Source: Pocillopora damicornis (Eukaryota). From it: a stretch of DNA of 64,000 nt. The notes beneath the pieces are model-generated. The model was not told the DNA's origin. It saw nothing but the letters and a program-made list of their open reading frames with translations, and ran no database searches. The translations under genes and the position numbers were made by a program. Within the stretch, counting starts at the first letter, position 1. Every line of letters starts with the position of its first letter. Location: assembly GCF_003704095.1 (NCBI RefSeq), contig NW_020845410.1, positions 930,001-994,000 on the forward strand, given 5' to 3'. This document shows positions 8,191-59,867 of this stretch, in pieces.

Positions 8191-11100
8191 ATGAAAAGGA
8201 CATATCAAAATGAGTTGGTGAGTAATTGTCTATGAGACTGTTAAATTGTTACTCAGTAGTTCATAGTTTCTGTAGTTCTTGATGGTTCTAATTGGTCACC
8301 TGAACAAGCGGAAAAAAGAGCAATCTTACGAGAAGACTAGCGCTGACACCGGCCTCATTAAATAACAAGTAACTCTTACCAGACAAGCAATGAAGGCAAC
8401 TCTCTGTCTGTTGGCGCTAAAAACAAATAAGTTAGTTGGTGCAATGGGAGGTGTTTAAATCTTTTATCCCACTTGATACACTGCCGAAGTTATAACATGT
8501 TGTGGTGAGTTCTGTCAAGATTCATATCATATCTGTGGTGACAGTAGTGGTGAAAAAAAATTTTACGGTTCTCAAGATCACTCAGATACTTGAAGCCTCT
8601 CGCAAGCTACAGAACAATCACTTAAACTCAATTTACACTGTTTTACTCTACCATTAATTTATACAGTGTTACATTTACAAGTTTAACCCTTCCAATTAAT
8701 ATCATCTACTGAAATAAGACGTGGTTTCTCACACGTAACAGACAAAATTCTTGATCCTTACAAACAATAACATCAAGGCAGGCAAGGTCAGTTTATTTTT
8801 ATAGGCATTTAAATAACGGATCTTATTAAGGATTCGATTATTTCAGGTCGACTGCTCCTCGACTAAGAGGGCCTTTGCGGCAAGCTCTCAGTCGCAGGGA
8901 AAGCGATACATAATAACCTCTGCCGCTGTTAGGAACTGCTTGTACGAAAGAAAACAACTGGTGTTCATCGACGCAAACAAACTACTAAGACTGAATTTTG
9001 AGGGCTTTAACAAGCAATTATGTAAGTTTATTCATTCGTAAATCCGTTATTTTACAGGCTTAGTCTCTCCTAATACGTAATATTTTAGATTTACTCACGA
9101 TACCGGATATAGCGTGTTCGCGAACTTTTCAAGTCAACCATAGCCTCCCTTCTGGCACACACATGATCCACGCTTATAAATGATAGAGCGGTCCTTATAA
9201 ACGTTTCTTGAAAGTTCAGACTCTATCTATTTGTCTTCTTACTCAAAGAGGAGAAGTAATTCATAAAACCTGTTGTTATGCTCGAGATAGTTTTTAATTT
9301 GTCCTGGAATGATTAAACTTTTTTTCATTAATAACTAGGGATTGCATTCTAGATTATTTTCATTGTTTTAGGATAGTGTGTCGTTTCATTTGAAGTCGTG
9401 ACCTTCGCCTTTTTTCCATTGTCTTGGAAAGCTAGAAATACCGCTTGTCATTTTTTGGAAAGCTTTAATGAACCGTGCTCTTTAAACATGGACGCTATTG
9501 TTAAAAGTTTTCTGACGGTAACTAAGAATAAGTAGAATTCCAACGCCTACTGGTATGAATAAGGCAGGTCTATTGCAACTTAACTGACACGTTTCTGAAG
9601 ATATCAAGAAAGCAAAAAGCAGATGGCTAAGGAAGCCTTGTAGTCACTTTTTTACTTGCTTACAGAACTCTCTAAAATACTCAATTGGAAAGGTAATGTG
9701 TCGTTAAGTTATGCAAAAATTTAAGGCTACATCTAAATGCTAAATTTATTCTATAGCTTTGTGTACGTGCGCCGTGCTTTTTCATTCAAACCCCTTTATC
9801 ACAGGAAAACTTTCGCAAGAAACCCTCACTCCTAGAAAACAATCACGCTATCTGTAGAAACTTGCTAGCGTCTAGTCCACATTACTCCAAAATCTGAAGT
9901 ACTCGTTTTGAGCAGTTCTTTTTAAAAAGGTCAATTGTTTTGTGCAATTGTTTTGTGCAATTGTTTTACAATTCGTCAGGAATACCCGAGGGATCCAATC
10001 TTCTCACACCTCATAAGAGTAAACACTTATGCCTTTCTTTGTTTGCTATAGACGCTTAACCGCCTGAACAAGCGTCCAAAAAAAAATTTGAACCCCGGAT
10101 CGTAAATCTTGCGCCGAAGACGTGAACGCGTGGTTAAATGAGAATACCCTTTTTTTCAGTGTGTCTTCTCTGTAAGAAAGACTATTCAGAACCTTGTCCC
10201 TTACATGGTTTGGGCCATGCGATCGTAGACAACAAACGTCTGCAGGGGAGCAGAGCTATGAAGTCACTCCCACCGGAAGTGAGTTTGTGCAGATCAAGTA
10301 TCCCTGGGACCGGGTTAGGAGTTTGTACTAGAAAACACATTCCTGCTGGCACCTGTATTGGGCCATTTGAGGGCAGGAGAATCCGACCAGAGGAGGTCAA
10401 ACCGGGCATGGATACGTCGTATATGTGGGAGGTAGGAGGCTAATTCCTTACCATATCTGATACGTTGGGTTCTGTAGTGATCAAACGAAAGATTGTCCTG
10501 TACAACAATTAAGAAAATTTTAAGCGTTCTGGGAGGTTGATTCTACGAGACCAAGCCCTATTGCTTAGTGAAATGATCTGCTCCATCACAGGGTACCTAC
10601 CAGCGTTCTATCAGCCTCTAGTCCCTCCTTCGGTGGAATGCTTCTCCATCACAGGTTACCTATTAGCGTTTTATCAGGCTCTCTCAAGAGTTCTTTTGGG
10701 TGGAGAGGGGGGAATTAATAATAAAAGTCTAGCTGTATTTGCTAATTTTTTGTTTAGTGATCCAAATAAATCGTACAAGCCAAGGTTTATCGAACCCTTT
10801 GCAGGAAACTTGTTGGTTCCATAACGTCTATATGCATATTAAAAATGTATGGGAAGAAGAAATACTGATTTTGGGAAATTTGCAGCTAAGAACAGCCAAG
10901 AGAATAGAAATCTCTAGAACTTATTTAAACTAAACAGGAAATATTTTTTAAAAGGTTATAATGGACATTTTAAGCTGATGTGTTTTTTTTTTCATTCTTT
11001 ATTTTTAGATTTTTGACGGCAGCAAGTTAACTTGTTTCATTGACGGCAGTGATGAAGAGACATCAAGCTGGATGCGTTTTATCCAGTGCGCACGCTCAAA

Positions 11101-12058
11101 AGTTGAACAAAACCTCTATGCGTTTCAGTACAAGGGCGAAGTTTATTATCGTGCATTCAAAGACGTTGCTGTTGGTAAAGAGCTTCTTGTGTGGTATGAT
11201 GAACGATATGTACAGCATTTTGGAATACCTTTTGGATATCAGAGCATGTCCTTCGTCAAAGATTTTGAAGGTAATTATGGTTGTTAATTATCCATTGGAA
11301 ATGTTTAAGTAGTATCATCAATATGGTTTGCACAAGCATTTAAAATATTCTAAAGAAAAATATAACACGTCAGACGTCTTTCCAAGTAAAAATGTAAGAT
11401 ACAGACTTTAAAAATGATTTACCTTTGTATCCGTATATTTGATGAGACATCTGTCTGTCAATCTTCTTCAGATGCTCGGCCAATGGTAAAAGAGCAGACA
11501 GGGGATAACAAATCTGCGCAGCAGAAACCTGTGTGTGCTCCTGCTAGTTTACTTCCCAGACAATTATCATCTGACAGCGATGTAGATGGTCAGCGATCCT
11601 CTTCTAACAGTGACGTAGAAAGTGACGTCAGTGACCCTGGAAATACATTAGTGCCCTTTCCCAAAAAATCTCCAGAAAGGGAATTTACTTCCTGGCGGTG
11701 CCAGCAGTGTCGCAAGACTTTTACTCAGCGGGTGGCCCTACAACTTCATGTCTGCCCATGCCAACCATCCAAGCCTTACCAGTGTGGCCAGTGCAGCCTA
11801 GCTTTTTGCAATTCTTCTCAGCTCCGTGCGCATGTCACGTCGCATTCAAGTGAAAAACCATTTAAATGCGGCTTCTGTTCGCGCGCTTTTGTCGGCGCGA
11901 CAACACTAAACAATCACATTAAATCTCACTTCGGGCAGAAGCCTTTTGGCTGTGACAAGTGCGGAAAAACGTTTTCTCAGCCTGGACTTTTATCCAAGCA
12001 CCAAAGAAATCCCCGCGAATGCAAAAGCGACGTATCCCCTCCAACCGTCAATAGCTAA
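8191..12058 (+). CDS. PRDM6: PRDM6-family PR/SET zinc-finger protein, copy A (~440 aa)
   Basis: Exons 8191-8217 (MKRTYQNEL, less certain), 8847-9021 ([16 protein letters not shown]), 10160-10431 (knuckle CLLC-x7-CPLH, SET N-half GPFEG...YMWE), 11009-11270 ([11 protein letters not shown]...ELLVWY), 11472-12058 (four fingers including [10 protein letters not shown]). Total 1323 nt, in frame. Confidence 0.9.
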
Positions 12059-13696
12059 CCTCCGCTCACAGTTCAATTTGTCGAAGAGTGTTTGTTTTGA
12101 AATTCTTGGCCATTTAGAGGACTTCTGACAAGTTTTCATTAATTTTACACATATAGTTTGTGCGGAAAAATAAAAGTGAATAATTATTCAAGTTGTTAAA
12201 ATCGCAGCAAAAAAAGCCAATGTATGGAGCAATAAGTAAAACAGACAAATGGAACAAATAAAGTTAGAGAACAATGCTTAGACTAGTTTTTTAATTTCAT
12301 CGATAATACCGAGTTTTAATAATTTTATTTTTATTTTTAGTATCATAAAAATCATTTTATAGCAAAGGCACTCGAACATAAATATTATTATTTTCATGAT
12401 AAAGGAAGGAGGAGAGAGACTGGAGACCAAGCCTATCCTTAAAGACTGATCATGCGAGAACCTTTTCTTCAGAGGAGTTCTGGGTATTCAAATGAAGATA
12501 TTTTGCTCGCAAATTATGCCTGCAGGTCTCGTAGGCGTTCTGGTCACATCTCGTCTGACTCAGTCGACTTGTTTTTTCGACTGGATTACGTTTTATGTTC
12601 TTGCAAAATGTTTACGCGATAAGTTTTGATGCTGTCCCTGGTATTTAACTCTATGTCGGCATCTTTGTAAAGAAAAAATTCTAGATCATTGTCTTATCTT
12701 TCGTTTACCGTAGAGTTCATTTTAATCTTCCTTTGTTTTTATGGCTCATTAGCTTGGAATTTTCTAGTGATGTTTAAAGGAAAGAACTAAAGAAAATTGA
12801 CGTGGCATCCATTAGAGCAACGTAGAATTAAAAAAATCCGTTGAACGTTGATGAAGGAAGCTATGCTCACTTAGCAGAGCGAGCACCGCTTGCACACATT
12901 TTTCAAACGGCTAGTGACCGAATTTGCGCATTGATAAATACGTGGTCTTAGTTAACCTCGCTTAGTTGTCTTTGTTCTCTTTGTCTTTTGCATTCCCCAA
13001 TCAACTCTAAAAGTCTTTATTCTGCACCAGAACTAAAAGTTCAAGTTTTAAAGACTTTTTGTCGTTTGGTGCAGGGTTTGCATTGAGACAAAACAGACTG
13101 GTATCATAAAAACTCGCTCCCAAACAAGTTACGAAAATAGAATAAATTTACAGATGAACAACAGAGATAAACTTGAAACTGTGGAAACATCAGCTTCATT
13201 TCTCCGCATGAGCAGCCAAACTGAACAGTGATCACATCAGCTTCAAATGGGGGCCACAAAACAAATTGAATATCTTGTGTAATGCTTGAAATCCTTACTG
13301 GGCTGGAATTGAGATTTTACTCTGTTTCTGCAGCCTTGCTGTAGCGTTTTCAAAATATCTTATGAAAAGAGCCTGAGGTTAACCTGAAGAGAAAATCAGA
13401 AGAAAAGTGCTTTAAAGTCTATTGTTCCTTATTTCTTATTATCTGTGGTAATTCTCCGTGAAGGTAATTGACTTTTGTCTTAATTCAAATTATGTGAATA
13501 GTGCATAAAAAGGCATACGTGGAAACACCACCGTCTTTGGACAAAGTAGTTTTCTGTCCTTTTAAAGTCTAATCACACGTCCACTCTTAGTTACGCACGG
13601 GGTGAAAAGAGAGCGCTTTGCGAGTCAGAAGGCGTACGATTCTATACTCCCCAAACTTAAGAAGATTTAAAGATCGACGATTTAAGAGGACTGCAA

Positions 13697-16600
13697 ATGG
13701 AAGTTAAAAACAAGGTACGTTCAATTTCTAGAGAAATCTTATTTTGGGTGACCACCTTAAGAGTGACGTTGAATGATCCATCGGAACGCAAACACCAATT
13801 CGACGAATCTTTAATAAATGGGGGGATAACGCCTTAGTTGCATGAAACATTGCATGTCTCTCATGCTTTCGATTGTTAGGACTAGTTTTTTTGCTTGTAA
13901 CGATTTGTAAAATCGTTCTTGATTTCTCTCGTTTCTTCACCTTCTTGTTGTTTAAAACCTGTTACGCCCCACCGAATTGAGTTTCCTACCAACTCGTCCT
14001 GATCGACGCACGTAAGCGTCTGGAGGCGAGATTTCGACACCAATCGTTTGTAAGCAACGAAAGACAATTTTGAAACACATTTCAAGTGGTTTTCCTTCGA
14101 TTTCACCCCTGAAAACTCGTGGAATTGAGTTTCTAAATCTCATTATGCAAGAACCTAAACTTTTGAAGGGGAAAAACAAAAGCTAAATACCGATGTTATT
14201 TGCATGACGTTTTTCATATATTTTCACCCTTGAAAACAATTTTCAAAGTTGCCATCCATTTTCAGTGTTCTTGTGGGTAAACAGACGGTCATGGTTTAGA
14301 ATAGAAACAAACTTTCTGAAAAATCTTGCTAACAGCTTGGAACAATGATTGTAATTCATTAAACCGAAAAACCGATCTGCTTCAGTGCCTTCGGAAATGA
14401 GGTATTCGTAAATCATTACTGTCGAGTGAATGAATCACGGACGAAGTTGACATTGCTCACTAATCACTAAAGTTTAGTCAAACTTAATTAACTTCCGATT
14501 TCCGAAGGTGATCTTGAAATCAACTCCTACACAACATTGCGATTGTTAAGTGTGCAAGTTGAAGGTTTCAATTGCTTAAAATTTCGATTGAATCCCGTAG
14601 GAAAATCGACTAAGTGTTTCCTTCTTTCACTGACATTTTTTATTTGTTTTTTTTTTTCAAATTTTTCTGTAATGAAATTTTAATGTTTCTGTGCTTGAAT
14701 TCTAACTAACGCAAACTTTTCCACATTTTACAGACGAGAAAAATGAACGAACCTTTTGGAGGAAAGAGCGTAAGCAGTGTGTATCAGCCCGTGACTAAGA
14801 AAGTGAAGCTCACGCCTCCTTCATCCAAAAGCGCACCGGTTTCAAACTTGAAACAGTTATCTTTTACTATGGCTGATGTACAGAAGTGCCTTTTTAACGT
14901 ATCTACTGTCCATCCAATTCACAGCCGTGAAGCCTTAGGAAAGAAAGATGGAGTTGGTTGTTTTTGTAAGTGTTTCGTGTGGGAGTTGTTTGCGCGAAAT
15001 GATGCACTTAATTCTGTGTCGATGGATTTTTTTAAATAAAAGCAAGCCAGGTGGTGTCTGTTCCTTCCATACATCATATAACAGCACCAAATTCTCGTGA
15101 TATTACTCGTGTTCTTTTATTACCGAAAAAAAAGCTTTGAATAGTTATCGATAAGTGTAAGTTTGTTATAATTTTTTTCACCGCGATTTTGCGTGCGTAG
15201 AGCTAATGCAGCTTTATCCCTTCTCTATTGTGTCATAAATCATAGCAATATTGAAATAAATTATTATTATTTTAGGGTGTGATGCAAGCGCAACAGACCC
15301 AAGCTTTAACTGCCCGCATCATAAACATGAAACCACTGCCACGAAGCAGACAAGACAATTGCCTCTCGCTTTAAGATCATTTCCGCCGGAGGTTGGCTTG
15401 TGTGTATCCAGCATTCCTGGGGAAGGATATGGAGTCTGTGCTAAGCAAAAAATTCCTATCGGGGCATGGATTGGTCCCTATGAAGGAAAGTTTGTGAAAC
15501 CTGAGGAAATTTCTTCGACTTCCAACACTTCTTACATGTGGGAGGTAGGGAAGTTGAATGATCGACTCTTAGAATAAAGTATGATTTGTTTTTTTTCTTT
15601 GTGGAGTTTTTTTTGTTAATTTCTCCGTTTACGTTCACAGATTTTTAAAGACGGTAAACTGGCGGGCTTTGTGGATGGTAGTGATGAAGAGTATTCCAGC
15701 TGGATGCGGTTCATCCGCTGTGCTCGTCACAAAGGGGAACAAAACCTGTTTGCCTTCCAGTACTTGGGCAAGGTCTACTATCGTTCATTCAAGACCATCC
15801 AGCCCGGACAAGAAATGCTGGTGTGGTACGATGACAAATATCCTCAGTACCTTGGCGTTCCAAGCTCAATCTTTGATTTGGGTTCTCTTACAGTCAATGG
15901 TGAGATTTTAAGTTATGTTTTAAGCATTGGCTGATAATTTCTGCGATTTGTGTGGGAAGGTTTGTTAAGTTTGAAAAACGGATAAATTGAAACGTCTTTT
16001 CTTCATAACTTCTACAGGAAAGTCAAACAATTCGGATGCAGCAGAAATTGTACGCTTGCCGTCCGAAACCTTGACACAAAATCAGTATCCCCCTACCCCT
16101 CCCAGCTCAGTTCCTTCTCCTGGAAGCCCACAATCACCAAACAGCCAGCCAATCAGCCCTCGCCAACACTCACCTTCCATGCCAATCGGTGGAGAGCCTT
16201 TGAATGGTTTTCAGACGGAAGTGTCCTCCGCCTTCGACTTTTCCTCTGTCACTGCAGCCAACTCGTCCAATCCACTTCCATCGCCAGAAAGCGAGAGGAG
16301 CAATCCTCCCTCACCCACTTCTTATGAAGACGGGCAAAACAACGCCACTAAAATCAATCAGCCCGCGTTTAGTAGCATCACAGAACTAAGTTTGTGGAAA
16401 TGCGGCCAGTGCAAAAAGTCCTTCCCTCAAAGAACCATGCTCCAAGTTCATGTGTGCAATGAAGCCCCAAAGAAGCCATACCAGTGCGGCCACTGTTCAC
16501 TTAGCTTCGCCCACCCAGCTCAGCTGCGCGCTCACGCTGTCATTCACGCCAGTAAGAAACCATTCAAGTGCGGATACTGTTCACGTGCGTTCGCTGGGGC

Positions 16601-16739
16601 GACCACATTGAACAACCACATCAGAACGCACACCGGTGAACGCCCCTTTGTTTGCGACAAGTGCGGAAAGAACTTTACGCAAGGATCACAACTTAGCAGA
16701 CATCAGAGAATACCTGGAGACTGTGTGGCACGAGCGTGA
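13697..16739 (+). CDS. PRDM6: PRDM6-family PR/SET zinc-finger protein, copy B (~499 aa)
   Basis: Exons 13697-13714 (MEVKNK, less certain), 14734-14965 ([12 protein letters not shown]), 15276-15544, 15641-15899, 16018-16739. Total 1500 nt, in frame. Knuckle CFWC-x9-CPHH spans a splice junction; SET has [24 protein letters not shown]; the C-terminus WKCGQC...[17 protein letters not shown]...HQRIPGDC parallels human PRDM6 as recalled (HQRMPNEC). Confidence 0.92.
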
Positions 16740-19134: not shown

Positions 19135-19251
19135 TTTTTTTACCACTGTCGCAAAAAATCTTTCTCTAGGCATGCTTTGAATCGATTCTTACCTTTTTTT
19201 TTACTACTGTCGCAAAAAATCTTTCTCTAAACATGCTTTGAATCGATTCTT
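19135..19251. repeat. 61-bp tandem duplication just downstream of the gene C stop codon
   Basis: tac(c/t)actgtcgcaaaaaatctttctcta(gg/aa)catgctttgaatcgattctt occurs at 19141 and 19202. Confidence 0.9.
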
Positions 19252-19351: not shown

Positions 19352-22300
19352 CTAGTCAGGCAGGCCGTCATAGGGAACACAATCTCCGGGTATATTCTCG
19401 TGCTTGTGAAGCTGGGAGGCCTGAGTAAAGTTTTTTCCACATCTCACGCATGAAAAAGGTTTTTCACCGGTGTGCGTGCGCACGTGGTTATGAAGAGTTG
19501 TTGCGCCCGCGAATGATCGTGAACAATAACCGCACTTGAATGGTTTCTCACCCACATGAACGACAGCGTGCGTGCGCAGCTCGTTTGGATAATCAAATGT
19601 CTGAGAGCACTGTCCACAGTGATAGGGCTTACGTGGCATGTTGGGGCATACGTGAATTTGAAGCACCGAGCGTTGGGCAAACGATTTCCCACACTGACCG
19701 CAGTTGAAAAGGTTCGCATCGGAACCATCCGAACTGTTTTCATCTTCATCAACAGACCATAACTGCGCATGCCTCTCGCCTATTTTTGACAGCGCGATTT
19801 TTGAGCCGTTACTGTATAGACCTCCAGAAGACATGGTGTCATGATGGCTGTCGTTTTGAATCGTTTGTGTATGTCCGCTGTTTAATCCAGAAGGTTTAAC
19901 TGGACCTTTATGAAGAAATCGCGCGTCCTCCGAAGAAGGAGAATTTTCAATCATTTGCACACTGTTTTGTAATGGCGCACCATCGGCTGTCCAGGAAACA
20001 TGGCGGACGCGTATGTATTCTTCAGCTGATGCACGTAAACTGTCGCCTCTGATAGAGGTGCTTTGAGTTAAGCGGCGTTTGACACCAGGTTGATCACGTG
20101 ACGGTAGCGTGGATCTGACTCCGGTTGTAAATTGAAGATTATCTTTCCAGGGACTGGATGAAGACTGATTTAAATGGGAGGAGCCTGGATTGGAATTATC
20201 ATATGGTATTACAACTACCATTTCGGGATGTTGTCTTTCTTCTATATCAAGAACAAAATAGTTGTCTGAAAACCGCGTTGGGGGGGGGGAGGGGGGGGGA
20301 GGAGAGTTACTGTATTTCGACGAGTTAACAGGGTATTTTTCATTTTCAGGAAACAATTTTTCAAAATGAAAATTAGAAATATATGTCTCATCAATGCCAG
20401 TTATACGCGTTAAACCATCCGTTACTTAACTTTATAAATTGAAGTTACATTTTATTGGGACAGGAAAATCTCGGAGTAGAGGGCGGATGATGATGAAGAC
20501 GTAATACAGGACTTCACTTAAAATGGGCACAATTTCTCCACATCCAGCAAAATAATTCTTAGGAAATTATTTATGTTGGTAGCGGACTAAGAATGATTGC
20601 TATTATAGTGACTTTACTTACCAACAGGATTATCGAGGGAAATTTCATATATTTCAAGAGGGATGCCCATATATTGCGGGTACTTCTCGTCATACCAAAC
20701 CAGCAGTTCACCTCCCGGAGGAATGTCCTTGAAAGCTCTGTAATAAATGTTACCACAGTACTGAAAGGCGTACATGTTTTGCTCGGTTCCATTCCTTGCA
20801 CATCTGATGTATCTCATCCAACTGGACTTGTTCTCATCGCGTCCGTCAATGTAATAAAGTAACTTTCCCTCGTGAAATATCTTTTGAAAAGAGAGTGATA
20901 AAATTAGCTTAAGAACTGAAAATAAGTTAGCACTTGATTTCTCGGAGGCTTAATTGGTTACACTGCCAAATATATTTTGAAGATTTGAAAATTAAAGTAT
21001 AGAAAAAAAGAAAAGTATAAAATAATCACTGGGAAACGCTTCAATTAAAATCAGTTGTGTGGATCGCCCTATTTCAGCCTGTGATTTAACGCAAACCTCA
21101 AAGGATAATTTACAAAATGTTTCACGAGGATGACTCTGAATTTAGATACTTATCATTCAATCTTTACATGAAAATCGTAGATAAAACCAAATCTACCTCC
21201 CACATATATGACGCATCAGACCCCAGTACCACCTCCTCAGGCCGCACCAGTTCCCCCTCGTATGGTCCAATCCACGTGCCCACTGGAATGATCTGTTTTG
21301 CGCAGACTCCATAACCTGCCCCAGGAATACTGGAAATGCACAAACCCACCTCATTTGGAAACGATTCGATCGCATTCGGCAATTTTACGATGTTATTGTT
21401 TGTGTCATTGTTGTTTTTGACTTTACTTGTCAGTCGGAATGACAGTTGAGGACCATGGAGCTGACATGGCTCAGTCCGTTCCAGATGACATCCTTTACAC
21501 CCTAGGGGAGGGGAGAGTGGGTATGATACAACTTAACGTTGATATGCTTGAAAGATTGCGCGTGCGTTGTCAGCTCGATTATGTAACTGTTTTTCATTTG
21601 GAATATGGCAAAACACTTCGTTTGACAAAAGATTTTTGAAACGTTATAAAGAAAGTCATCAGTATGTTTCATCCCATTTGATTCTAACGAATCCTAAAAT
21701 GGGTGTTAGCCCATTTCACTGACAAGGATAAAAAAACGACGTGAATTGAGTGGAGCTATTTATAACCTTATGTTTTTGAACTTCAAGTAACCTAACATTA
21801 TATAATAAGCTCAGTTATGTACGTATTCAAATTGGTTCTCACTTATATATATATATATCTCAGTAATAAATCACAGAGGACGTCAAAACGTGGTAAGAAC
21901 ATAAGTGACACACTCGGCTGCGCCTTGTGTGCCACTTTTTTGTTACCATATTTTGACGTCATCTGTGATCTATTATTGAACAGACGGACGGCAACTTGGA
22001 ATCTATTTGTCAAATCGACCCGATTTAGAGGCAAACGAACCGCGGCACGTGTGAAGAAGTGACTATATGAAGTTATTAACCACGACACAGCTACTGCTCT
22101 AAGAAATAAGAGGAACGGTTTGATCTGCTTATGATAACAATGGCTAAACCGGCATTTATAACTCATAAAAGTTCTTTGATTCCAGATTATAATAACTGTT
22201 GTTGCAACTTGACAGTAAAAAACAAGCGAATAACTGGGGTGCTGGAAGGCTCCTCTTGATAAAAACTTCATTTTGAGCACACTGAAGTTCTTTTTCGAGC

Positions 22301-23451
22301 TTTTTCGTTTCACTTTGATAGATGCGCAAATTTCAGGTTACATTTTAGCGTCAAACAAACCCTGTTAATTGATATAAGTTCTTTAGACTTGAAGATAATT
22401 ACTAGTAATAACCCGTGAGAGGCACCCTTCGCCGTAAAGTGAAAGCCGACTTCTGGTCAAGTTGACGCCGAACCTTTTTTCCTTATACAATGACATATTA
22501 TGCGAGCTACAAATTTCAAACAACCAAACTGAACAGATAAATAACACCATAATCTCTGTCTAAAAATATCGGATGATGATATCTAAATTTAGCTAAACAT
22601 ATGCCTCATTCTTTTGTTATTTTAACACGAAAGACTGCACTTTGCTTAATGCATTTTTCAATTTTTCTGAGGTACGAAAAAATTGTGCAGACCTCGAGAC
22701 TTCGTTAGCATTTGCATTTCGAGCGTGTGCCCAGAATCGTTCAAGTCATCCCTCTTTCGCTTGACAGCGAAAACTCGGCCGAAAGCTTTAGTGCTTGTTA
22801 ACGGTCAGTTAATTTTAAACAGCAACTGAAGGTACACAGTTTCTTTTAATTTCCTGTTGTTCAGGATCATTCGCAATTGCGGTGGGTGAGTGAATTTCGC
22901 GAAAGTAATTCATAATGTGTTGGATGAATGTTTCAAAGTTGTGTTTGGTATTGTATATTTGTCCCGGCGAATTGTTCAATTCACCCCGAAAATATGAGGC
23001 AAAATGAACGCCACCTGGTTACCTTCTGAGAACACTCATGAACAACTTAAATAAATCTTTATCCACAAGTTATGACTCTACAAGAAATTTAAGCACAGTT
23101 AGTTTCTATCACAGGAATAATTAAACTGCAAACCACAGAGTTGTTTTAACAATACCGATGTAAACCCGCGAAACCGTGGTTACGGAAATATTCGTTAAAA
23201 ATAACTTTGGCAAACATTTGACAAAATGGCGACTTACAGTAGCGGATCGCTTCTTCTTTGTGTAGACCTGAACTTCTAAAATCGTCCGTGCTCACAGAAA
23301 TGACTTGATTTCGCTGGTATAAACATTGATGAAGATCCTCTATGCTACAGAGGTTGACATCCGCGGCATGTGAGCGAACTCTTCTCGGCGTTCGAGATGA
23401 TAATGTGTGTTCACTTGCGGATTTAGGTCTTGAAATGCCTGCGTTACTCAT
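19352..23451 (-). CDS. PRDM6: PRDM6-family PR/SET zinc-finger protein, copy C (~555 aa)
   Basis: Exons in transcript order: 23451-23238 (CSIEDLHQCLYQR), 21501-21197 (CKGC-x7-CQLH knuckle, GPYEG), 20880-20622, 20241-19352 (alternative in-frame acceptor at 20265). Total 1668 nt, in frame; four fingers ending HENIPGDC. Confidence 0.9.
21865..21974. repeat. Hairpin/palindromic interspersed element in a gene C intron
   Basis: aataaatcacagaggacgtcaaaacgtggtaa is inverted relative to ttaccatattttgacgtcatctgtgatctatt (~32-bp imperfect arms); preceded by a (TA)n run. Confidence 0.7.
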
Positions 23452-25938: not shown

Positions 25939-26173
25939 TGTGCATTTGATGTTACATGAAGTCCTACTTTCATTCTGTTCCTTAATTTGTCATTATGAGG
26001 GAATTCACACTTCCTCACCCTAGAGAAGACGTTTTCCAGTGGCTAACAATCGTTGGAGCTGTGCATTTGATGTGACACGAAGTCCTGCTTTTATTCTGTT
26101 TTTTAATTTGTCACTACGAAGGAATTCACACTTCCTCACCCTGGAGAAGACGTTTTCTAGTGGCCAGCAATCG
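25939..26173. repeat. 121-bp-period tandem duplication overlapping the gene D stop codon
   Basis: Units 25939-26052 and 26060-26173 align without gaps and differ by scattered substitutions. Confidence 0.92.
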
Positions 26174-53286: not shown

Positions 53287-53447
53287 GTAATCACATGATA
53301 TTTCCCTGGCAATTTGGAATGAATGACGCTAATAAATTTTCTTAAAGAACAGAAATTGCACTTTCCCACGGGCTTGTGCATTTTGCTGGTTTTTGAAAAA
53401 AATTGCTCGTTATTCAATCCAAATTGCACTCGAAATTATGTGATTAT
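53287..53447. repeat. Degenerate palindromic MITE-like element
   Basis: taatcacatgatatttccctggcaatttggaatgaat is inverted relative to attcaatccaaattgcactcgaaattatgtgatta. Confidence 0.6.
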
Positions 53448-53646
53448 GTGAACGCTGATTCGGTTAGTACTTAGGATGGATATTGTGAATCACCCCCAGA
53501 TCTTATTATGTGTCAATCGTGATCAGTATTAATTTTTATGTGCAGGGGAGATGAAATGCTCTCACCTAGTTTCGAGTGCGTGTTCATAACACTTACGAAG
53601 CGGTAAGGCCAAATGGATTGTTCAACAGTAAACCCATTGATTGATA

Positions 53647-53845
53647 GAGTAATCTAGTGTTATCAACTGAGTTGATAACGTAAATTGGCCATCGTAGAGA
53701 GTTTAAAGGTTAACGTTTCGAGCGTTAGCCCTTCGTTCGCTCTGACGAACGTCAGACTTTAAACTCTTTACGGTAGCCAATTTACGTTATCAACTCAGTT
53801 GTTAAAAAGAAATTACCCTGTTATACTCTCCCACTGACGCAGCAC
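53647..53845. mobile_element. Decayed second copy of the hammerhead-bearing palindromic repeat
   Basis: Shares caactgagttgataacgtaaattggcca, cgtttcgagcgttagcccttcgt, ttacgttatcaactcagttg and aaattaccctgttatactctc with 33569-33826; both hammerhead cores are damaged. Confidence 0.8.
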
Positions 53846-54891
53846 CTGAAAATGAGCATCATGTTCTTCAACGGGTTTCGAACCCGTGCCTTGGCCTCAC
53901 CTTTCACCTGGAAATATCATTTAGTTTCCATTTTATTCCGAGAATTTCCGTTGTGTATAATATGTTGTCAGCCTGACATGATAATTCAAAGTGATCTAAG
54001 TGAGATTTTTACGCCCTGTTATTTGCTCCAAAGTTCTTGTATGTCACAAATGAACTAATATACACCAATATGATAACACTTGCGCGAAAATGTTATCTAT
54101 CCTGTAAATTCTTTTCAACCGCAATAGTACTGGTTATATCACAAATATGAACAGCTCTTGAAGCAATGCAACCGATATAGCTATAGCAATTAGGTTAAAT
54201 TATCTCGATATCTTATCAATACTTTTTCATTAGCAGGCCGTATTTGCTCCTCATAAACAATACAGTGTTCGCCTCAAACGAAGCTTGTACAGCTCAAGAT
54301 AATTTGGTTTTATTAACTGAGTTGATAAATTATAATCGTCAATTAAAGGTGCACTACAACTAATAGCCTTTTTACATCAACGGCTTGTATACATAACCAC
54401 TTGCTAAGGATAATATTCAAAGACGCTGTACGCGTCATACGTCGGTAAATAACTATGATAATTAATAAAAGCCGTGCCGTGCCAAAACAGGTTTATTTAT
54501 TTTAATAAATTGCGTTAGAAATTTCAAAAATGAGTTGATTTGAATGTAAGCTAATCACATAGCCTAAAGAGAAATCCAATTCTTTTTACGGTGAAACAGT
54601 GAAATAAGTGGAATGTTTATATATTAGGGACACGCGAGAGAGAAAGAAACCAAGCCGAACTACAATACAGCGTTCTTCATCTAAAGAATCTACTCTAAAG
54701 TAAATAATTCAGTGGACATAAACATGTTACCTCCTGTACATGTGAAGCTAAGTTTAAGATTAAAATCCCCCTCGTTGTCATTCCATGGTGTTTTACTCAC
54801 TTCACTTGGCACATTATTTGTAATACATAATGAGAGTTATCATTTTTAAGATTTCAGTCAGGATGCAGCTAACTTCATTCCCTGAAAAATT

Positions 54892-57800
54892 TTAATTTAC
54901 GCAAATCCTACGATGTCGACTAAGCTGGGAAGCTTGTGAAAATGACTTCCCACACCGTTCGCACGAAAATGGCTTCTCTCCAGTATGCGTGCGCATGTGA
55001 TTATTCAAGGTGGTCGCTCCACTAAACGATCGCAGGCAGTACCCGCATTTGAAGGGCTTCTCGCTAACGTGAACAACTGCGTGCATACGCAGTTCTTTTG
55101 GTTGAGCAAAAGATTCATGACAATGGCCACATCGGTAGGGCTTACAAGACATGCGCGAACAAAGATGATTGTTCAGAAGAGAACGCTGAGTGAAGGACAT
55201 TTTACACTGACCACATTTGAAATCATCACACTCCCTGAAGTTCTCCAAAACTTTCTCGTATATCTTGCGGTATCCAGTAGTCAGCTGAATTCCTGTGGTG
55301 GTTATCGAGTTGTTTTCTGCAGGTGACATACTATTGCTTGATTCTTGTTGCCTTCGAGGCCGCTTGAGAGGTCGTTCTGTTTCTTGAAGGAATGATTTGT
55401 CCACCAGCCGCTTACAAGGAGGGGAGCTGTAGTTAACATTAGGCTTGCTGCTCCTTGCTTGATGGTCAGCTTCTTGACTGACATTATCAGGAGAGTTTTC
55501 TTGTTCCGTCTGTGGTTGCGCACTTGAAATAGTGACGCTGTCAGCATGCTTCGTGCTTGATGCTTTTCCTTCGAAATCTAGAGAAGAAAATGGGATTTCA
55601 TTTGAAAAAGATGAAAACAAATTATATAATTAATTGCTGAAATAGCATCTGATTCAAAACAGTCATGTGTAAAATATCTTCATTTATGCATGTGTATTTT
55701 CTGAACTCAAGGATTGAAAGGCAACGTTTTTCGAAATTCGTCGTAGAATAAAAATTTAGCTAATGTGAGTTAATTTACTCCTTAATTTGGGTCCATTTGA
55801 AGAGCAATCTCTTAATATTTGCTAAATATGGCATCAGAAACATAACGTTTTTGAGGCATATAATAATTTTGTTTAACTGGTTTTTAAGAAATATTTCACC
55901 TGGAAAGTGTTGTGAAATATCCTTCGTCCAGTTACCGACAGGTATCCCCATGTGCTGCAAGTAATAGTTATCATCATACCACACCAATAACTCTGTACCA
56001 CTTGGTATTTCACGGAAAGCGCGATAAAAGATACTTTTGTTGTGCTGAAATGCAAACATGTTTTGCTCCTCTTTGTGACGAGCGCAACGAATAAAGCGCA
56101 TCCAGCTCGAAGTATCCATATCACTACCGTCTAAAAAAAAGGCCAGTTTCTCGTTCTCGTAGACCTGCAGCAAGAGAGAATAACGTATTTTTGTTGGAGC
56201 TGACCTTAGTGCTATTGGATCAGCAAAAGAAATGACGAACTTAAACAGAGAAAAAGAAAAAAGGGTTGTGAATTTTATTTGCTCAGCCTTCGAGTTATGA
56301 GTTATTTGTCTTGACCTTTACAGAAGGAAAGGGGTTGAGTCTTCCAAAGGAGCCGAATTCAGTAATAAGACTTAGAAAACCTGACGCATGATTTATCAGT
56401 GAGATACAGTGAACTTGCAGCGATTCAGGCAAAACAGTGCAACGGTGTAACAGTGCCTGATTTCGGGATTGTGACATTTCAAAGATTAAAAGTTGTTGTA
56501 TTAATTTAAAAGTGATAAACCTATGGTCTACGCGCGCACATACCTCCCACATGTATGACGTGTCTATATCCGGAGTAACGATATCAGTTGAAAGGTACTT
56601 TCCTTCATATGGACCAATCCATGTTCCCACGGGAATATGCTGCTTTGCGCAAACTCCATAACCCTCCCCTGGGATTCCAGACAGGCAAAGTTTCACTTCA
56701 TCCGGGAACGAGGCCACAGCGTAGCTTAGTTTTGCATTCCTTGCAGACTTTTTTTGACCTGTTTCCATGGCTACATCAATCCATCTTCCATCTGGCGTTG
56801 TTTTGGGGACCTTGGATTGTTGTTCTTTTGGATAATAATGAGTGTCAGTGAAATAAACTAATTTTTATTAGGAGCTAATTCATTTTTTATATTTCTATTA
56901 AGTTATTTTCTTTATCAGTATTCCGAATTAGTCTGTCAAAAGCCTAATACTCTGACAGTTAAATAAAGTCTGCCACAACACCATGGACGCAACTGAAATG
57001 TTGCGTAATGTTAGAACATAATATTTGGTGGGATTAAGTGTCAAATTTTTATTCTTTTCACCACGATGGAAAGAAATAAATCGTTATCTCTTAGTTTAAT
57101 TTGTTCGACCCTCAAAAATTAAAGGTGTTCTTGTTAGCAGAATTTATAGTTATTGCATCGCCACTTTTTCACTGGAAGTGCAAATCTCTTGTTTGTGGAA
57201 CCGTTTTGGAGACGCACAGAACAGAAAATAAATATCTTATTAACCTTCACCTACTAGTCTACACTATAAGCTACGGATCCTCCTTTGTTTAGTTTCGCTG
57301 TACGACTTATGCCAGCGCTTGATTCATATGCTGAAGGGAAAAACTCGGTCCGTAACTTATGTTGCTACGCGATTCAGGAGGTTCGAGTGCCAAGAGCTAA
57401 AAGCAACCAATTAGATTGCTCCATTTATGGTCCCGCAAGGGCTCATATTTTCCCAAAATCGGACCGGGTAATGTCCCAGTTGATCCCGCGCGACTCCGGG
57501 GAGGATTTTGCCCGATCAAATCAAGGTAACTGTCCACCGGATAAATAGTTCTAAGACCGTAAAATGTGTAGTTAGAAACTCCGTGTATTCACAACGAACT
57601 AGAAAAATCGTGACGTGAAGGTCATGACGGTACGGACCTCGTTGCACTCGGTCCCTACCGACACGGACTTGTGGCTGGTCATATACATACATGTGTGGAC
57701 CCCGAAATCGTTTAGTAAGAGTTAACGCTTTACTTCTTCATCGACCTATTATTTAATAATTCATCAAAAATTATTTAATATAATTAATCTACCGTACGAT

Positions 57801-59867
57801 TTTAAAATCTTTATCGACCTTTAATTTACCTGAGCTTTCCATGTCTTCTTCAGTCATCGTTTCTAAAATGTGTACCTCTTCCACAGAATTTCTTCCGTAC
57901 AGAACATACTGCAGATCTTCTTCAATAAAATGCCCCCGGCACTGTGAAGAAGTATCAGATCCGGTTGATGATGGCGGACCGTCCATCTAATAGAATTAAA
58001 GTACAAGATATGTGAATATTCCAGCAAGCATTACCATTTTCATTATCAACATTCGTTTATAAGCGACAAAATTGGATTTAAAGTTGGGTAATTATAAGAT
58101 ACCTTCCTGACACAAATATTTCAACTAGTTACTGTCTTCACTAGATTTTCTTTAGTCTGAAAAATCGTGCTAAGCAGTGTCCAATGAAATTCTGTCGCAT
58201 GGTGTCGTTGCGCAATGTTGCAACGGAGTTAGTTCCGGAAATCGGAGCTAGTGCGTAACTAATCAGATATGTGGAAATTTATATGGAAAAAATCGTTCTC
58301 TGTCTTGTTTATTCAATGATTAGAAAATAATTTATATCCGGTTAATCAAAGGATCAACGTAATCATCTGATTTCGGAAATTAAAGAGATATCCTTCCAAC
58401 TGAATATTGCGAAACTGCCGTGATCGATTGCTTACGATGGTAATCAGGGCTACTTAAAACTCGATCTCTGATTGGTCAAATTGCGGCCGCACCCCAAAAA
58501 GGAAACCTCTTCAAGTGGTGTCGAAACTTCCTGCTAAATTGCAAAGAACGACGAAGGAATATAAGATACATTTCAATGAAAATGGATCTTTGAGTTTCTT
58601 TTTTGTAATTTATTTTTTCATACACGTTGAAAATCCTACGACAAATTAACAATACATCATACAAAGAGGGTTTCAGAAAGGTTAAGCGTCAGCCGCAAAA
58701 CGGCCAAAACATTTTGCCGTTAAGCCTTAAAATTGACAAATTTTAACCGTTAGTCGTAAAAGCCATCATCTGTTTGAGACCACTTAGGAACATTTTCTGT
58801 AGTTGTGCTATCTCCTAAATTGAAACTATTCAGTATTGTGATTAAAACACTGATCGATTGAAGATATAAAATCAGTAATCGTTACAGTTCAATTCCTCAA
58901 AACTGAACTATAATCTCGGTGAAATAACGAGTTTAATGACTCAAAATTGACGATGTATGATTGGGTTAGTTGCTCAATCATTGTCTGCTAGTAAATTTAG
59001 CCATGTTTAGAATTGAATGTTTCAAGAAAAATGTCGCTGCTTGAAGTGATCCTGAATGTCGCAAGAACATAAATGTCTACTGTTCTCTTTAAATTACATT
59101 TTGTTTACGCACAATTCAGCTCTTTCTTCCTAGTACGCAAAAGAAAAAAATCCCAAAATTTGAATGACTGAAATCGTCAAACCAACAAGTGGTATTGATT
59201 CGATTGCGAAACGAAATATATACAACAGCAGAAGTCCTTTTCAATTCGTAGGTACAATAGTTTACATTAAATAGCTTACGAGAGAGGTTCTAATGACAAC
59301 TCGGCCACTTGAATGTTTGCACGTCTCTCCTAACACTTCGACGTGTATATTTCAGTGACAATTTAAAATCAAAATACGATTTATGTGCACAGAAATAGCT
59401 TTCAATAATCCAACATAATGGGGCTGGTGTATTCTTTGTTTCACCGGTGACATTTTTGTTTAAACGTTCTTGTGAAAGTAAAACAAAAGACGGCCAGGGA
59501 CCATTTACGACGGCTGCAGAGCCACTTTCATCAGAAAGGGGTCAAGAAAAGGGAGGCTCACAAAGTAAATAGAAAAACATTTAAGACAAACAACTGGAGA
59601 ATGGTGAACAAACCAGACTATTACACAGAAGTGATGGCAAAACTGAGCTGAGTTCTCGCCACAAAATGTTCTGAGGAAAGAGGCGGCAACAAAATGAAGA
59701 ACAGCGCTAAGTAGAAACTGAACAAAACTCAGTCTCGTATTCCTCCATTATTTCGTATACGTCATGGCTGAAAAGGTGAAATAATTGCCTTTCTTCTAAT
59801 GATCATCAATAATAACAGACCTATTTTGCCTTACCTTTGAAAGCTCTTGGATCTCTTCCAAGTTCAT
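54892..59867 (-). CDS. PRDM6: PRDM6-family PR/SET zinc-finger protein, copy G, no zinc knuckle (~484 aa)
   Basis: Exons 59867-59835 ([11 protein letters not shown]|gtaagg, less certain), 57986-57830 ([13 protein letters not shown]), 56857-56544 (acceptor approximate; GPYEG), 56164-55900, 55577-54892. Total 1455 nt, in frame; four fingers. Confidence 0.88.
58665..58784. repeat. Possible degenerate MITE with internal accgt-type repeats; related sequence near 38490-38600
   Basis: Imperfect inverted ends gagggtttca / tgagaccact; a ttttaaccgt motif is shared with the 38.5-kb segment. Confidence 0.3.

What the first reader, a model, noticed from the sequence alone, without database searches (positions are those of the whole stretch)
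8191..59867. Array of seven intact, divergent PRDM6 paralogs in about 52 kb
Seen in sequence: seven genes share one architecture and the same intron positions (phase 1 at the start of the SET N-half exon, phase 0 after (M/L)WE, phase 1 after the SET domain, all fingers in one terminal exon). None has a frameshift or internal stop, and their linkers and introns do not align, which points to old duplications kept by selection. Established: PRDM6 is single-copy in human; the [23 protein letters not shown] and HQR.P..C fingers are PRDM6 hallmarks. I recall that several Prdm6 paralogs have been reported in anthozoans, so the expansion itself may be known; the physical cluster with no intervening genes is the notable part. 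Inference: a clustered family of chromatin regulators that may specify cell types combinatorially.
Basis: partly seen in the sequence, partly recalled or inferred. Interest (0 to 1): 0.85.

Follow-up and report, generated by a model that had tools for sequence, protein, structure and literature searches.

The report
Conserved PRDM6-family gene array in coral
The window holds seven real, expressed or selectively maintained PRDM6-family transcription-regulator genes lying side by side in a Pocillopora coral genome; they are part of a larger array of about ten that is old and keeps its gene order across corals, which makes it a solid but fairly ordinary example of tandem gene-family expansion.

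Summary
The seven genes exist where stated: two on the + strand and five on the - strand. All share the stated intron phases: phase 1 before the knuckle/PR exon, phase 0 after (M/L)WE, phase 1 after the PR domain. All fingers lie in one last exon. RNA contigs confirm the splice joints of c1 and c2.

Corrections to the finding:
- c4 has only fingers 2 and 3, a form conserved in two other corals.
- c5 has an extra linker exon.
- No start codon was found for c4 or c5.
- The array continues past the window, with three more members within 26 kb, one from a SET-only lineage.

PRDM6-family membership is well supported. The fingers are 60-69% identical to fish PRDM6. Fish PRDM6 finds the cluster first in this genome. 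A pre-SET motif is shared with deuterostome PRDM6. The clade has 100/99 support against PRDM9.

Strict orthology is unresolved: two non-cluster coral genes group nearer to bilaterian PRDM6 (AU p=0.12).

The duplications are old. Each copy tested (c1 in genomic loci only) has its own coral orthologues, and some have sea-anemone ones. Order c4,c3,c2,c1 is kept in another coral; a third keeps c3,c2,c1. dN/dS is 0.06-0.35.

RefSeq already names these genes PRDM6 in a sister species. I found no paper describing the cluster. Combinatorial cell-type function is untested.

The parts
8191..12217 (+). c1, PRDM6-family gene. E0 8191-8217 is predicted only. E1 8847-9021 carries the pre-SET motif. E2 10160-10431 carries the knuckle and PR N-half. 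E3 11009-11270 is the PR C-half. E4 11472-12058 holds the linker and 4 fingers. The 3'UTR runs to at least 12217.
   Evidence: RNA joints 10431|11009 and 11270|11472, E2 start at 10160 and transcript end near 12217 all come. A loose end of the RNA contig matches the E1 end at 9021. An orthologue in locus L009 is 75-79% identical, with dN/dS 0.16-0.27. The 'GPYEG' tyrosine is Phe.
13549..16739 (+). c2. E0 ends at 13714 and holds the ATG at 13697. E1 14734-14965, E2 15276-15544, E3 15641-15899, E4 16018-16739 with 4 fingers.
   Evidence: All four coding joints, plus the E0|E1 joint, are seen in RNA contigs of three studies. The boundaries are read. The transcript protein P0131 is 89% identical over E4. 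dN/dS is 0.06-0.13.
19352..23451 (-). c3. E1 23451-23238 holds the ATG. E2 21501-21197, E3 20880-20622, E4 20241-19352 with a long linker and 4 fingers.
   Evidence: The spliced transcript protein P0002 (556 aa, related species) maps as four blocks onto these exons at 73-87% identity. Splice sites are read. dN/dS is 0.07-0.24.
26126..28709 (-). c4, a two-finger variant. E1 28709-28559 has no ATG found. E2 28132-27864, E3 27708-27450, E4 26835-26126 holds only fingers 2 and 3, then a short tail.
   Evidence: Fingers 1 and 4 are absent in all three frames and Pfam finds fewer fingers. The same two-finger end is present in Oculina P0145 and in locus L009. dN/dS is 0.13-0.35. An RNA contig of run X1 runs from c2 E3 into c4 E3 sequence, a weak sign of transcription.
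31785..36685 (-). c5. E1 36685-36499 has no ATG found. E2 34615-34350, E3 33543-33279, extra linker exon 32729-32568, E4 32368-31785 with 4 fingers.
   Evidence: The transcript protein P0170 (481 aa) maps to E1, E2, E3, the extra exon and E4 at 42-89% identity. The extra exon has phase-1 sites on both sides and is 162 nt long. The 'GPYEG' tyrosine is Phe.
42199..44729 (-). c6. E1 44729-44501 holds the ATG. E2 44091-43817, E3 43505-43256, E4 42974-42199 with 4 fingers.
   Evidence: P0133, named 'putative histone-lysine N-methyltransferase PRDM6 isoform X1' in Pocillopora verrucosa, maps as four blocks at 94-100% identity. Junctions are read.
54892..59867 (-). c7. E0 59867-59835 holds the ATG. 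E1 57986-57830, E2 56824-56544 has no zinc knuckle, E3 56164-55900, E4 55577-54892 with 4 fingers.
   Evidence: P0174 (P. verrucosa 'PRDM6', 473 aa) maps as five blocks. The main blocks are 90-99% identical; the short first block is a weak match (40%, E 0.05). Junctions are read.

Best explanation
The window contains seven members of an old tandem array of PRDM6-family genes in a Pocillopora coral. The whole array has about ten members spread over roughly 80 kb of one scaffold.

Each gene encodes four parts: a short N-terminal region with a conserved pre-SET motif; a zinc knuckle, degenerate in some copies; a PR/SET domain split by a phase-0 intron; and, in one terminal exon, a variable linker plus four zinc fingers of the pattern C2HC, C2H2, C2H2, C2HC.

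The array arose by repeated local duplication and one inversion. At least two lineages existed before sea anemones and stony corals split. Most of the rest existed before the stony corals diversified. The copies have since been kept by purifying selection with their order and orientation.

By homology with vertebrate PRDM6, the proteins most likely act as finger-tethered transcriptional repressors or chromatin regulators. This step is inferred, not shown here. The paralogues differ mainly in linker, N-terminus, knuckle and the finger-2 helix, so they probably diverged in expression and partners rather than in DNA target. Two lineages have simplified: c4 keeps two fingers, and c9, just outside the window, belongs to a lineage with none.
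For: - Seven gene sets with identical intron phases.
- Pfam PR domain and C2H2 fingers found on the window's own exons.
- RNA splice joints for c1 and c2 in three studies.
- Spliced transcript or RefSeq proteins of related species map exon by exon onto c2, c3, c5, c6 and c7.
- Finger region 60-69% identical to catfish PRDM6. The eight best hits of that protein in the 234-Mb genome are all finger exons of this cluster.
- The PR/SET part of P0133, the 94-100% identical protein of a sister species that stands in for c6, scores 142-164 bits against bilaterian PRDM6, versus 106 (PRDM12), 104 (PRDM9) and 94 (PRDM14) for solved structures.
- The pre-SET motif is shared with Branchiostoma, Saccoglossus and catfish PRDM6 and absent from the PRDM9 rows.
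- The family clade has 100/99 support against PRDM9/7.
- Copies c2-c7 each have coral orthologues in the tree. c10 groups with Nematostella/Actinia proteins, and c3+c7 with a Nematostella protein.
- Order c4> c3> <c2 <c1 is repeated in another coral assembly, and c3> <c2 <c1 in a third.
- Two adjacent family members lie together in Nematostella.
- dN/dS is 0.055-0.35 at dS 0.5-1.0 for eleven of the E2-E4 exons of c1-c4 (c1 E2 had no match in L009).
- Three further members lie on the same scaffold.
Against: - Function is inferred from vertebrate PRDM6 only. No binding, repression or methyltransferase evidence exists for any of these genes.
- Transcription in this genus was shown directly only for c1 and c2. 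There is a weak hint for c4.
- Start codons of c4 and c5 were not found, so completeness of those two is not proven.
- The trees hold only PRDM6-like and PRDM9/7 database proteins (the 124-row tree also one PRDM12-like gene of this genome). The other PRDM subfamilies were compared only through bit scores to solved structures.
- In the careful tree, bilaterian PRDM6 sits with two non-cluster coral lineages (94/80 and 91/95). The cluster may therefore be a sister lineage rather than co-orthologues.
- dN/dS was computed per exon with a simple Nei-Gojobori count at fairly high dS.
Confidence: 0.85

Rival explanations
1. The cluster genes are not co-orthologues of bilaterian PRDM6. They would be a separate, cnidarian-retained sister subfamily. 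The strict PRDM6 orthologues would then be the non-cluster genes on scaffolds C4119 and C1639, which in Nematostella lie on a different chromosome.
For: In the careful tree, bilaterian PRDM6 groups with the C4119 lineage (94/80) and then with the C1639 lineage (91/95), not with the cluster lineages. The quick tree shows the same. The C4119 lineage keeps a knuckle plus 'HGPLHSLRKLV' almost identical to deuterostome PRDM6. The Nematostella members of these lineages are on a 22.2-Mb record, while the cluster-type ones are on a 19.0-Mb record.
Against: The AU test does not reject a single cnidarian clade (p=0.122). The cluster fingers are closer to bilaterian PRDM6 (60-69%) than the C4119 fingers are (48-49%, three fingers only). 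The conserved knuckle is also present in PRDM9-like proteins, so it is an ancestral trait and does not show kinship.
Confidence: 0.3
2. Some or most copies are decaying duplicates (pseudogenes), or the array is an assembly artefact made of duplicated haplotypes.
For: c4 lacks two fingers. No start codon was found for c4 or c5. c1 has long branches in the tree. Only two copies have direct RNA support.
Against: The copies are only 35-77% identical in protein, and their introns do not align, so they cannot be collapsed or duplicated haplotypes. The c4,c3,c2,c1 order recurs in one independent assembly of another species and c3,c2,c1 in a second. The two-finger end of c4 is conserved in two other corals, with dN/dS 0.13-0.35. 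The c1 orthologue shows dN/dS 0.16-0.27. All E2-E4 frames are open. DNA runs of a further study hold 96-99% of the sampled words of the 6-kb stretch tested.
Confidence: 0.04
3. They are truncated PRDM9 paralogues. A 2026 preprint (10.64898/2026.09.07.749791) describes such 'SET + zinc finger' forms as old and conserved in Hexacorallia.
For: The domain make-up, SET plus fingers, is the same. That preprint reports such paralogues predating the Actiniaria/Scleractinia split, some of them on one scaffold.
Against: Coral PRDM9-like proteins (P0196, P0199) and vertebrate PRDM9/7 fall outside the 100/99 clade that holds the cluster lineages and bilaterian PRDM6. The four fingers are a fixed, conserved set aligned residue by residue with bilaterian PRDM6, not a fast-evolving array. 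The pre-SET motif is absent from the PRDM9 rows.
Confidence: 0.03

Closest known systems
Vertebrate and other deuterostome PRDM6 (PRISM), a PR/SET plus four-zinc-finger transcriptional repressor
   Same: Both have the pre-SET motif F(T/S)xE(D/E)LxxYLYG, a zinc knuckle, a PR domain and four fingers of type C2HC-C2H2-C2H2-C2HC. The finger helices are nearly identical, for example [10 protein letters not shown]. Finger identity is 60-69% and PR-domain identity 46-51%. The introns before the knuckle (phase 1) and after (M/L/F)WE (phase 0) are shared with the Saccoglossus and Branchiostoma genes.
   Different: It is single-copy in deuterostomes (established knowledge for human), against about ten clustered copies plus at least two dispersed relatives here. 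The deuterostome genes split the PR C-half and the fingers over several exons, whereas here all fingers are in one exon. The knuckle is degenerate or lost in c2, c4 and c7. c4 has two fingers. The first of the three PRDM9-type catalytic tyrosines is Phe in c1 and c5, as it is in catfish and Saccoglossus PRDM6.
Anthozoan proteins annotated 'putative histone-lysine N-methyltransferase PRDM6' (Pocillopora verrucosa, Oculina, Acropora, Montipora, Porites, Nematostella, Actinia, Exaiptasia, Dendronephthya)
   Same: They are the same family. c6 and c7 are 98-100% and 90-99% identical to two P. verrucosa entries. Copies c2-c4 and c6-c7 have a named orthologue in another coral; c5's closest database proteins are unnamed and c1's orthologue was found only in genomic loci. 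Several paralogues lie on one chromosome record in Oculina and Nematostella.
   Different: The databases list them as separate proteins. I found no description of the physical array, its conserved order, the two-finger lineage or the finger-less lineage in the papers searched.
Tandemly duplicated gene clusters of coral genomes (Noel et al. 2023, PMC10236652)
   Same: The origin is local duplication. That paper counts about 30% of Pocillopora and Porites genes as tandem duplicates of various ages.
   Different: That paper stresses immune and disease-resistance families and does not mention PRDM genes. This array is a developmental-type transcription-factor family. Its members are old, highly diverged and syntenic across genera.

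Membership tests
PRDM family (PR/SET domain zinc-finger proteins) | PR-type SET domain | tested here: met
   PF21549 matches all seven E3 exons (E 1e-27 to 2e-30, profile positions 50-123). It also matches the three E2 exons tested (positions 3-49). PF00856 also matches.
PRDM family (PR/SET domain zinc-finger proteins) | C2H2-type zinc fingers C-terminal to the PR domain | tested here: met
   PF00096, PF13465 and PF13894 match all seven E4 exons. c4 has only two fingers.
PRDM6 subfamily | Fixed set of four fingers (C2HC, C2H2, C2H2, C2HC) alignable with bilaterian PRDM6 | tested here: met
   Six of the seven copies align residue by residue with Branchiostoma, Saccoglossus and catfish PRDM6. 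Identity to catfish is 60-69%. c4 keeps fingers 2 and 3 only.
PRDM6 subfamily | Pre-SET motif and zinc knuckle N-terminal to the PR domain | tested here: met
   The motif is present in the E1 of all seven copies and in the three bilaterian PRDM6 proteins. It is not found in the PRDM9 rows. The knuckle CxxC...CxxH is complete in c1, c3, c5 and c6, degenerate in c2 and c4, and absent in c7.
PRDM6 subfamily | Groups with bilaterian PRDM6 to the exclusion of other PRDM subfamilies | tested here: inconclusive
   The clade has 100/99 support against PRDM9/7. A PRDM12-like gene of the same genome falls outside it in the quick tree. Bit scores to solved PRDM12, 9, 14, 11, 4, 1, 5 and 2 structures are lower than to PRDM6. 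A tree with all 14 subfamilies was not possible with the sequences at hand.
PRDM6 subfamily | Reciprocal best match with bilaterian PRDM6 | tested here: met
   Forward: the SET region of a c3 orthologue finds PRDM6 of Branchiostoma, Saccoglossus and catfish (E 1e-48 to 1e-42) ahead of any PRDM9 (E 1e-33 or weaker). Back: catfish PRDM6 against the whole genome gives the cluster's finger exons as its top eight hits.
PRDM6 subfamily | Direct (co-)orthology to the single bilaterian PRDM6 gene | tested here: inconclusive
   Non-cluster lineages C4119 and C1639 group nearer to bilaterian PRDM6 (94/80 and 91/95). A single cnidarian clade is not rejected (AU p=0.122).
PRDM6 subfamily | Transcriptional repressor or histone methyltransferase activity | not testable with these tools
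   Sequence only. Two of the three PRDM9-type catalytic tyrosine positions are kept in all copies. The first is Tyr in c2, c3, c4, c6 and c7 and Phe in c1 and c5. The mapping of these positions to PRDM9 rests on my recollection of the PRDM9 literature.

The most novel reading that the evidence does not exclude
The array would be a deeply conserved, jointly regulated transcription-factor cluster. Its order and orientation would have been held since before stony corals diversified, and in part since the coral/sea-anemone ancestor, because members share regulatory elements. Individual paralogues would mark different cnidarian cell types, for example cnidocyte or neurosecretory subtypes. The two-finger and finger-less members would act as natural modulators of the full-length ones.
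Probability: 0.15. Interest if true: 0.7.

Novelty: new member of a known kind. Interest (0 to 1): 0.4.

Why it matters
PRDM6 is thought to be the oldest PRDM subfamily, present in the metazoan ancestor (Vervoort et al. 2016, PMC4760075). It is single-copy in deuterostomes and lost in protostomes.

A stable array of about ten members in corals shows that this ancient regulator diversified strongly in one lineage. The array has partly sea-anemone-age members, conserved gene order and naturally simplified forms. It offers a compact locus for asking how duplicated chromatin regulators divide their work.

A 'PRDM6-like' gene is listed among cnidocyte specification and differentiation genes in Nematostella (10.1101/2022.05.11.491463; PMC13193452). 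Knowing which paralogue that is would be useful.

For annotation, the result warns that 'PRDM6' labels in anthozoans cover at least ten distinct old lineages. Gene predictors may also fuse neighbours: an 803-aa Porites model may be such a fusion, which I did not check.

Tried and rejected
- tblastx between the regions upstream of the seven genes found nothing at E 1e-4.
- Rfam at gathering threshold found no RNA family anywhere in the window.
- Exact-sequence look-ups of the Oculina and Acropora proteins P0135, P0138, P0145 and P0147 returned nothing, so named chromosome-level synteny could not be read.
- A kinase gene next to the Nematostella pair has no counterpart in the window or in the 40 kb beyond it.
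- The supplements of Vervoort et al. are not held, so their Prdm6 copy numbers for cnidarians could not be read.
- Pfam on open frames of the intergenic spacers and flanks gave only a weak C2 hit outside the array. No open frame of 75 aa or more in the spacers resembled a gene.
- Rejected readings, listed under rivals: assembly artefact, pseudogene array, and truncated PRDM9 paralogues.
- Spliced proteins of the window's genes were never joined or sent to any tool. Every search used single exons by reference, and the window's genes entered the trees as separate per-exon rows. The joined step was left out.

Full report
WHAT IS THERE

The window is positions 930,001-994,000 of a 1.5-Mb scaffold in a 234-Mb, 4,393-contig assembly. 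It holds no N. Two of the genes encode proteins 94-100% and 90-99% identical to RefSeq proteins of Pocillopora verrucosa, so the genome is a Pocillopora. From memory, the assembly size and contig number fit the published P. damicornis draft; that is an inference.

tblastn with the exons of one copy finds seven sets of three conserved exons. I call the genes c1 to c7 along the window. c1 and c2 are on the + strand and c3-c7 on the - strand, so c2 and c3 lie tail to tail.

GENE STRUCTURE

In every copy the exon carrying the N-half of the PR domain ends with (M/L)WE directly followed by GT (phase 0). The next exon opens after an AG with I/V-F/Y and closes at a phase-1 GT of good consensus. The last exon opens at a phase-1 AG and runs through a variable linker and all fingers to the stop. 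Pfam on the exons themselves puts the first intron between profile positions 49 and 50 of the PR domain model and finds C2H2 fingers in all last exons.

I found it in all seven copies. It carries a motif of the form F/I-T/S-x-x-D/E-L/V-x-x-x-L-Y/F and joins the next exon in phase 1.

Start codons:
- c1, c2 and c7 have one more short first coding exon ([26 protein letters not shown]).
- c3 and c6 start inside the motif exon.
- For c4 and c5 the motif exon starts at an acceptor with no in-frame ATG. Their start codons must lie in exons I could not find.

The exon coordinates are given under 'parts'.

DIRECT SUPPORT FOR THE MODELS

Contigs of polyA RNA libraries from three studies, laid on 10,100-16,099, show these GT..AG joints:
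- c1: 10431|11009 and 11270|11472.
- c2: 13714|14734, 14965|15276, 15544|15641 and 15899|16018.

These are exactly the predicted sites. The c1 contig ends near 12,217. Its 5' loose end matches the end of the c1 motif exon at 9,021. One contig of run X1 leaves c2 exon 3 and continues into c4 exon 3 sequence. That is a chimera of two similar transcripts and a weak sign that c4 is transcribed.

For c3, c5, c6 and c7 the support is indirect. Spliced transcript or RefSeq proteins of related species (P0002, P0170, P0133, P0174) map block by block onto the predicted exons.

1. c4 is not a four-finger gene. Where finger 1 should be, the frame reads unrelated residues. After finger 3 the frame runs into a 15-residue tail and a stop. 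No other frame holds finger 4. This is not fresh decay. The Oculina orthologue P0145 and the orthologue in an unnamed coral assembly (locus L009) end the same way, after fingers 2 and 3 with a similar tail.

2. c5 has an additional 162-nt exon (32729-32568) with phase 1 on both sides. It matches residues 234-287 of the transcript protein P0170.

3. The zinc knuckle CxxC...CxxH in front of the PR domain is complete in c1, c3, c5 and c6. It has lost its first cysteine pair in c2 and c4. It is missing in c7.

4. The array does not end with the window. A search of the whole genome with one PR exon finds three more members on the same scaffold:
   - c8 at 997.4-1,000.8 kb on the + strand, with four fingers.
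   - c9 at about 1,003.0-1,003.3 kb on the - strand. Only the PR C-half exon was found. Its database relatives are 330-395-aa proteins with a SET domain and no fingers.
   - c10 at 1,017.9-1,019.9 kb on the + strand, with four fingers.

   Related genes lie on three other scaffolds (C1639, C4119, C4013).

IS IT PRDM6?

Five lines agree at the level of the family.

(a) The SET region of a c3 orthologue, searched against 5.8 billion proteins, finds dozens of anthozoan proteins named PRDM6. It then finds Branchiostoma, Saccoglossus and catfish PRDM6 (E 1e-48 to 1e-42), and only then PRDM9/7 (E 1e-33 or weaker).

(b) Catfish PRDM6 searched back against this genome gives the finger exons of eight cluster genes as its eight best hits, at 60-69% identity. 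Ordinary zinc-finger genes score 34-45%.

(c) Against solved structures, the PR domain of the c6 orthologue scores 106 bits with PRDM12, 104 with PRDM9, 94 with PRDM14, and less with PRDM11, 4, 1, 5 and 2. Against bilaterian PRDM6 it scores 142-164 bits.

The pre-SET motif is present in all three bilaterian PRDM6 proteins (FTPEDVDFYLYG, FTYDDLYYCLYG, LTSEELDYYLYG) and was not found in the PRDM9 rows.

(e) In a careful maximum-likelihood tree of 55 database proteins (285 columns of PR and finger domains), all PRDM6-like proteins form a clade with 100/99 support. Vertebrate and mollusc PRDM9/7, coral PRDM9-like and two Clytia proteins are excluded.

The window's genes entered a 124-row tree as separate rows per exon, never joined. 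For c2-c7 and c10, all exon rows of a gene fell into the same lineage as its database orthologues. c8's finger row fell in a sister sub-branch of its own lineage. c1's rows have long branches and are placed without support: E3 and E4 next to c5, E2 elsewhere.

Gene structure agrees in part. The Saccoglossus and Branchiostoma PRDM6 genes share the phase-1 intron just before the knuckle and the phase-0 intron after (L/F)WE. They have further introns in the PR C-half and within the fingers.

The WE intron is also present in a PRDM12-like gene of this genome (C4013). It is therefore a PRDM-wide feature, not a PRDM6 hallmark.

WHAT IS NOT SETTLED

It is not settled whether the cluster genes are the co-orthologues of the single bilaterian gene. 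In the careful tree, bilaterian PRDM6 groups with the C4119 lineage (94/80) and then with the C1639 lineage (91/95). The cluster lineages form an unresolved comb.

The best tree that holds all cnidarian sequences together is 7.1 log-likelihood units worse, which the AU test does not reject (p=0.122).

The C4119 lineage keeps a knuckle and following 'HGPLHSLRKLV' almost identical to deuterostome PRDM6. Coral PRDM9-like proteins have a similar knuckle, so this is an ancestral trait. Its fingers are fewer and more diverged than those of the cluster genes. I give the 'sister subfamily' reading about 0.3.

AGE, SELECTION AND SYNTENY

Copies are 35-77% identical in the conserved domains. The closest pairs are c2/c4 (76-77% in the PR domain) and c1/c5 (67% in the fingers).

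Each lineage has its own members in other corals:
- c2 and c4 in Oculina, with an Acropora protein at their base.
- c3 in Porites.
- c6 in Oculina and Porites.
- c7 in Desmophyllum and Montipora.
- c8 in Oculina and Montipora.
- c9 in Montipora.

c10 groups with Nematostella and Actinia proteins (97/94). c3+c7 group with a Nematostella protein (95/89). So at least two lineages predate the split of sea anemones and stony corals.

A 21-kb locus from an unnamed coral assembly (L009) carries orthologues of c4, c3, c2 and c1 in the same order and orientation. Each is the clear best match of its counterpart, except the PR-N exon of the c4 orthologue, which scores marginally better to c2. A third assembly (L014) repeats c3, c2, c1. 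In Nematostella two family members lie 7.5 kb apart.

Per-exon Nei-Gojobori estimates between the window and L009 give dN/dS of 0.055-0.35 at dS 0.5-1.0 for eleven of the twelve E2-E4 exons of c1-c4; c1 E2 had no match within L009. This includes the fast-evolving c1 (0.16-0.27) and the two-finger c4 (0.13-0.35).

These results rule out an assembly artefact and a pseudogene array.

SPACERS

No open frame of 75 aa or more in the spacers looks like a gene. That includes the 10-kb gap between c6 and c7 and the 5.5-kb gap between c5 and c6. Pfam on flank and spacer frames found only a weak C2 hit at 1.2-1.6 kb, outside the array. 'No intervening genes' therefore holds as far as these tools see.

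HOW IT LIKELY WORKS

What is shown is the domain make-up, conservation, transcription and splicing. What is inferred, from what is established for vertebrate PRDM6, is that these are nuclear transcription regulators. In that picture the fingers tether the protein to DNA or to partners, and the PR domain and flanking regions recruit repressive chromatin enzymes.

Among the paralogues the helix of finger 3 is nearly invariant (GATTLNNH in six of seven; c3 has GATTLHNH). Fingers 1 and 4 vary little. Finger 2 varies most. I therefore expect similar DNA targets, with divergence mainly in expression and in linker- or N-terminus-mediated partnerships.

Of the three tyrosine positions that I recall as catalytic in PRDM9, two are kept in all copies. 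The first is Tyr in five copies and Phe in c1 and c5, as it is in catfish and Saccoglossus PRDM6.

The two-finger (c4) and finger-less (c9 lineage) members could act as modulators of the others. That is speculation.

KNOWN OR NEW

Public annotation already names these genes PRDM6 in P. verrucosa and many anthozoans, several per genome.

Vervoort et al. (PMC4760075) place Prdm6 in the metazoan ancestor and list it among subfamilies with duplications. The main text says nothing on cnidarian copies or clusters, and the supplements are not held.

Noel et al. (PMC10236652) show that about a third of Pocillopora and Porites genes are tandem duplicates. They do not mention PRDM.

A 2026 preprint on cnidarian PRDM9 describes old SET+finger paralogues of PRDM9, which the tree separates from the present genes.

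Two Nematostella papers list a 'PRDM6-like' or 'prdm6' gene among cnidocyte specification and differentiation genes.

I found no description of the array, its conserved order or its reduced members. Given how common tandem arrays are in corals, I rate it a well-documented new member of a known kind.

LIMITS

- Only one 6-kb stretch could be checked with RNA.
- The trees lack most PRDM subfamilies.
- dN/dS covers c1-c4 only.
- The species names of loci L009, L014 and L015 are unknown.
- Spliced proteins of the window were never joined for any search. Exons were searched singly by reference, and the joined step was left out.

Noticed in passing
G000 scaffold C2045: 997,363-1,000,768 (+), about 1,002,991-1,003,296 (-), 1,017,888-1,019,870 (+); loci L001 and L003: Three more members of the array lie just beyond the window end. 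c8 and c10 have four fingers. For c9 only the PR C-half exon was found, and its database relatives (P0152, P0181 and others) are SET-only proteins without fingers.
   Followed up: partly
G000 C4119:509,923-511,300 (L006); C1639:about 53,100-55,500 (L005); C4013:about 435,600-437,300 (L007): These are dispersed relatives. The C4119 gene has a knuckle almost identical to deuterostome PRDM6 but only three diverged fingers. The C1639 gene is cut by a 100-N gap after finger 1. The C4013 gene looks PRDM12-like and shares the intron after MWE.
   Followed up: partly
window 100-5,500 (+): Open-frame pieces rich in coiled-coil-like sequence (for example 4401-4796 and 5172-5492), plus a weak C2-domain hit at 1242-1565, suggest a flanking multi-exon gene unrelated to the array. 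GC skew is high at 2-6 kb.
   Followed up: partly
Rfam at gathering threshold found no RNA family anywhere in the window. I did not run the more permissive search.
   Followed up: partly
window 12,743-13,714 (+): In one RNA run a 973-nt contig runs unbroken from 12,743 to the donor of the first c2 exon at 13,714. Other runs cover only 13,549-13,714. This may be a long or alternative 5' leader of c2, or unspliced or intergenic RNA.
   Followed up: no
window 25,900-26,200 (-), just after the c4 stop: The tail of c4 and the sequence about 150-240 nt downstream of the c4 stop share a repeated stretch. It is translated as RLLATRKRLLQGEEV*IPS**QIK in one frame and appears again, slightly changed, in another. 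This suggests a small local duplication or inserted repeat where finger 4 once was.
   Followed up: no
P0121 (Porites evermanni, 803 aa) and the 856-aa Nematostella model in L008: Some public gene models of this family are much longer than their relatives. They may be fusions of neighbouring array members made by gene predictors.
   Followed up: no
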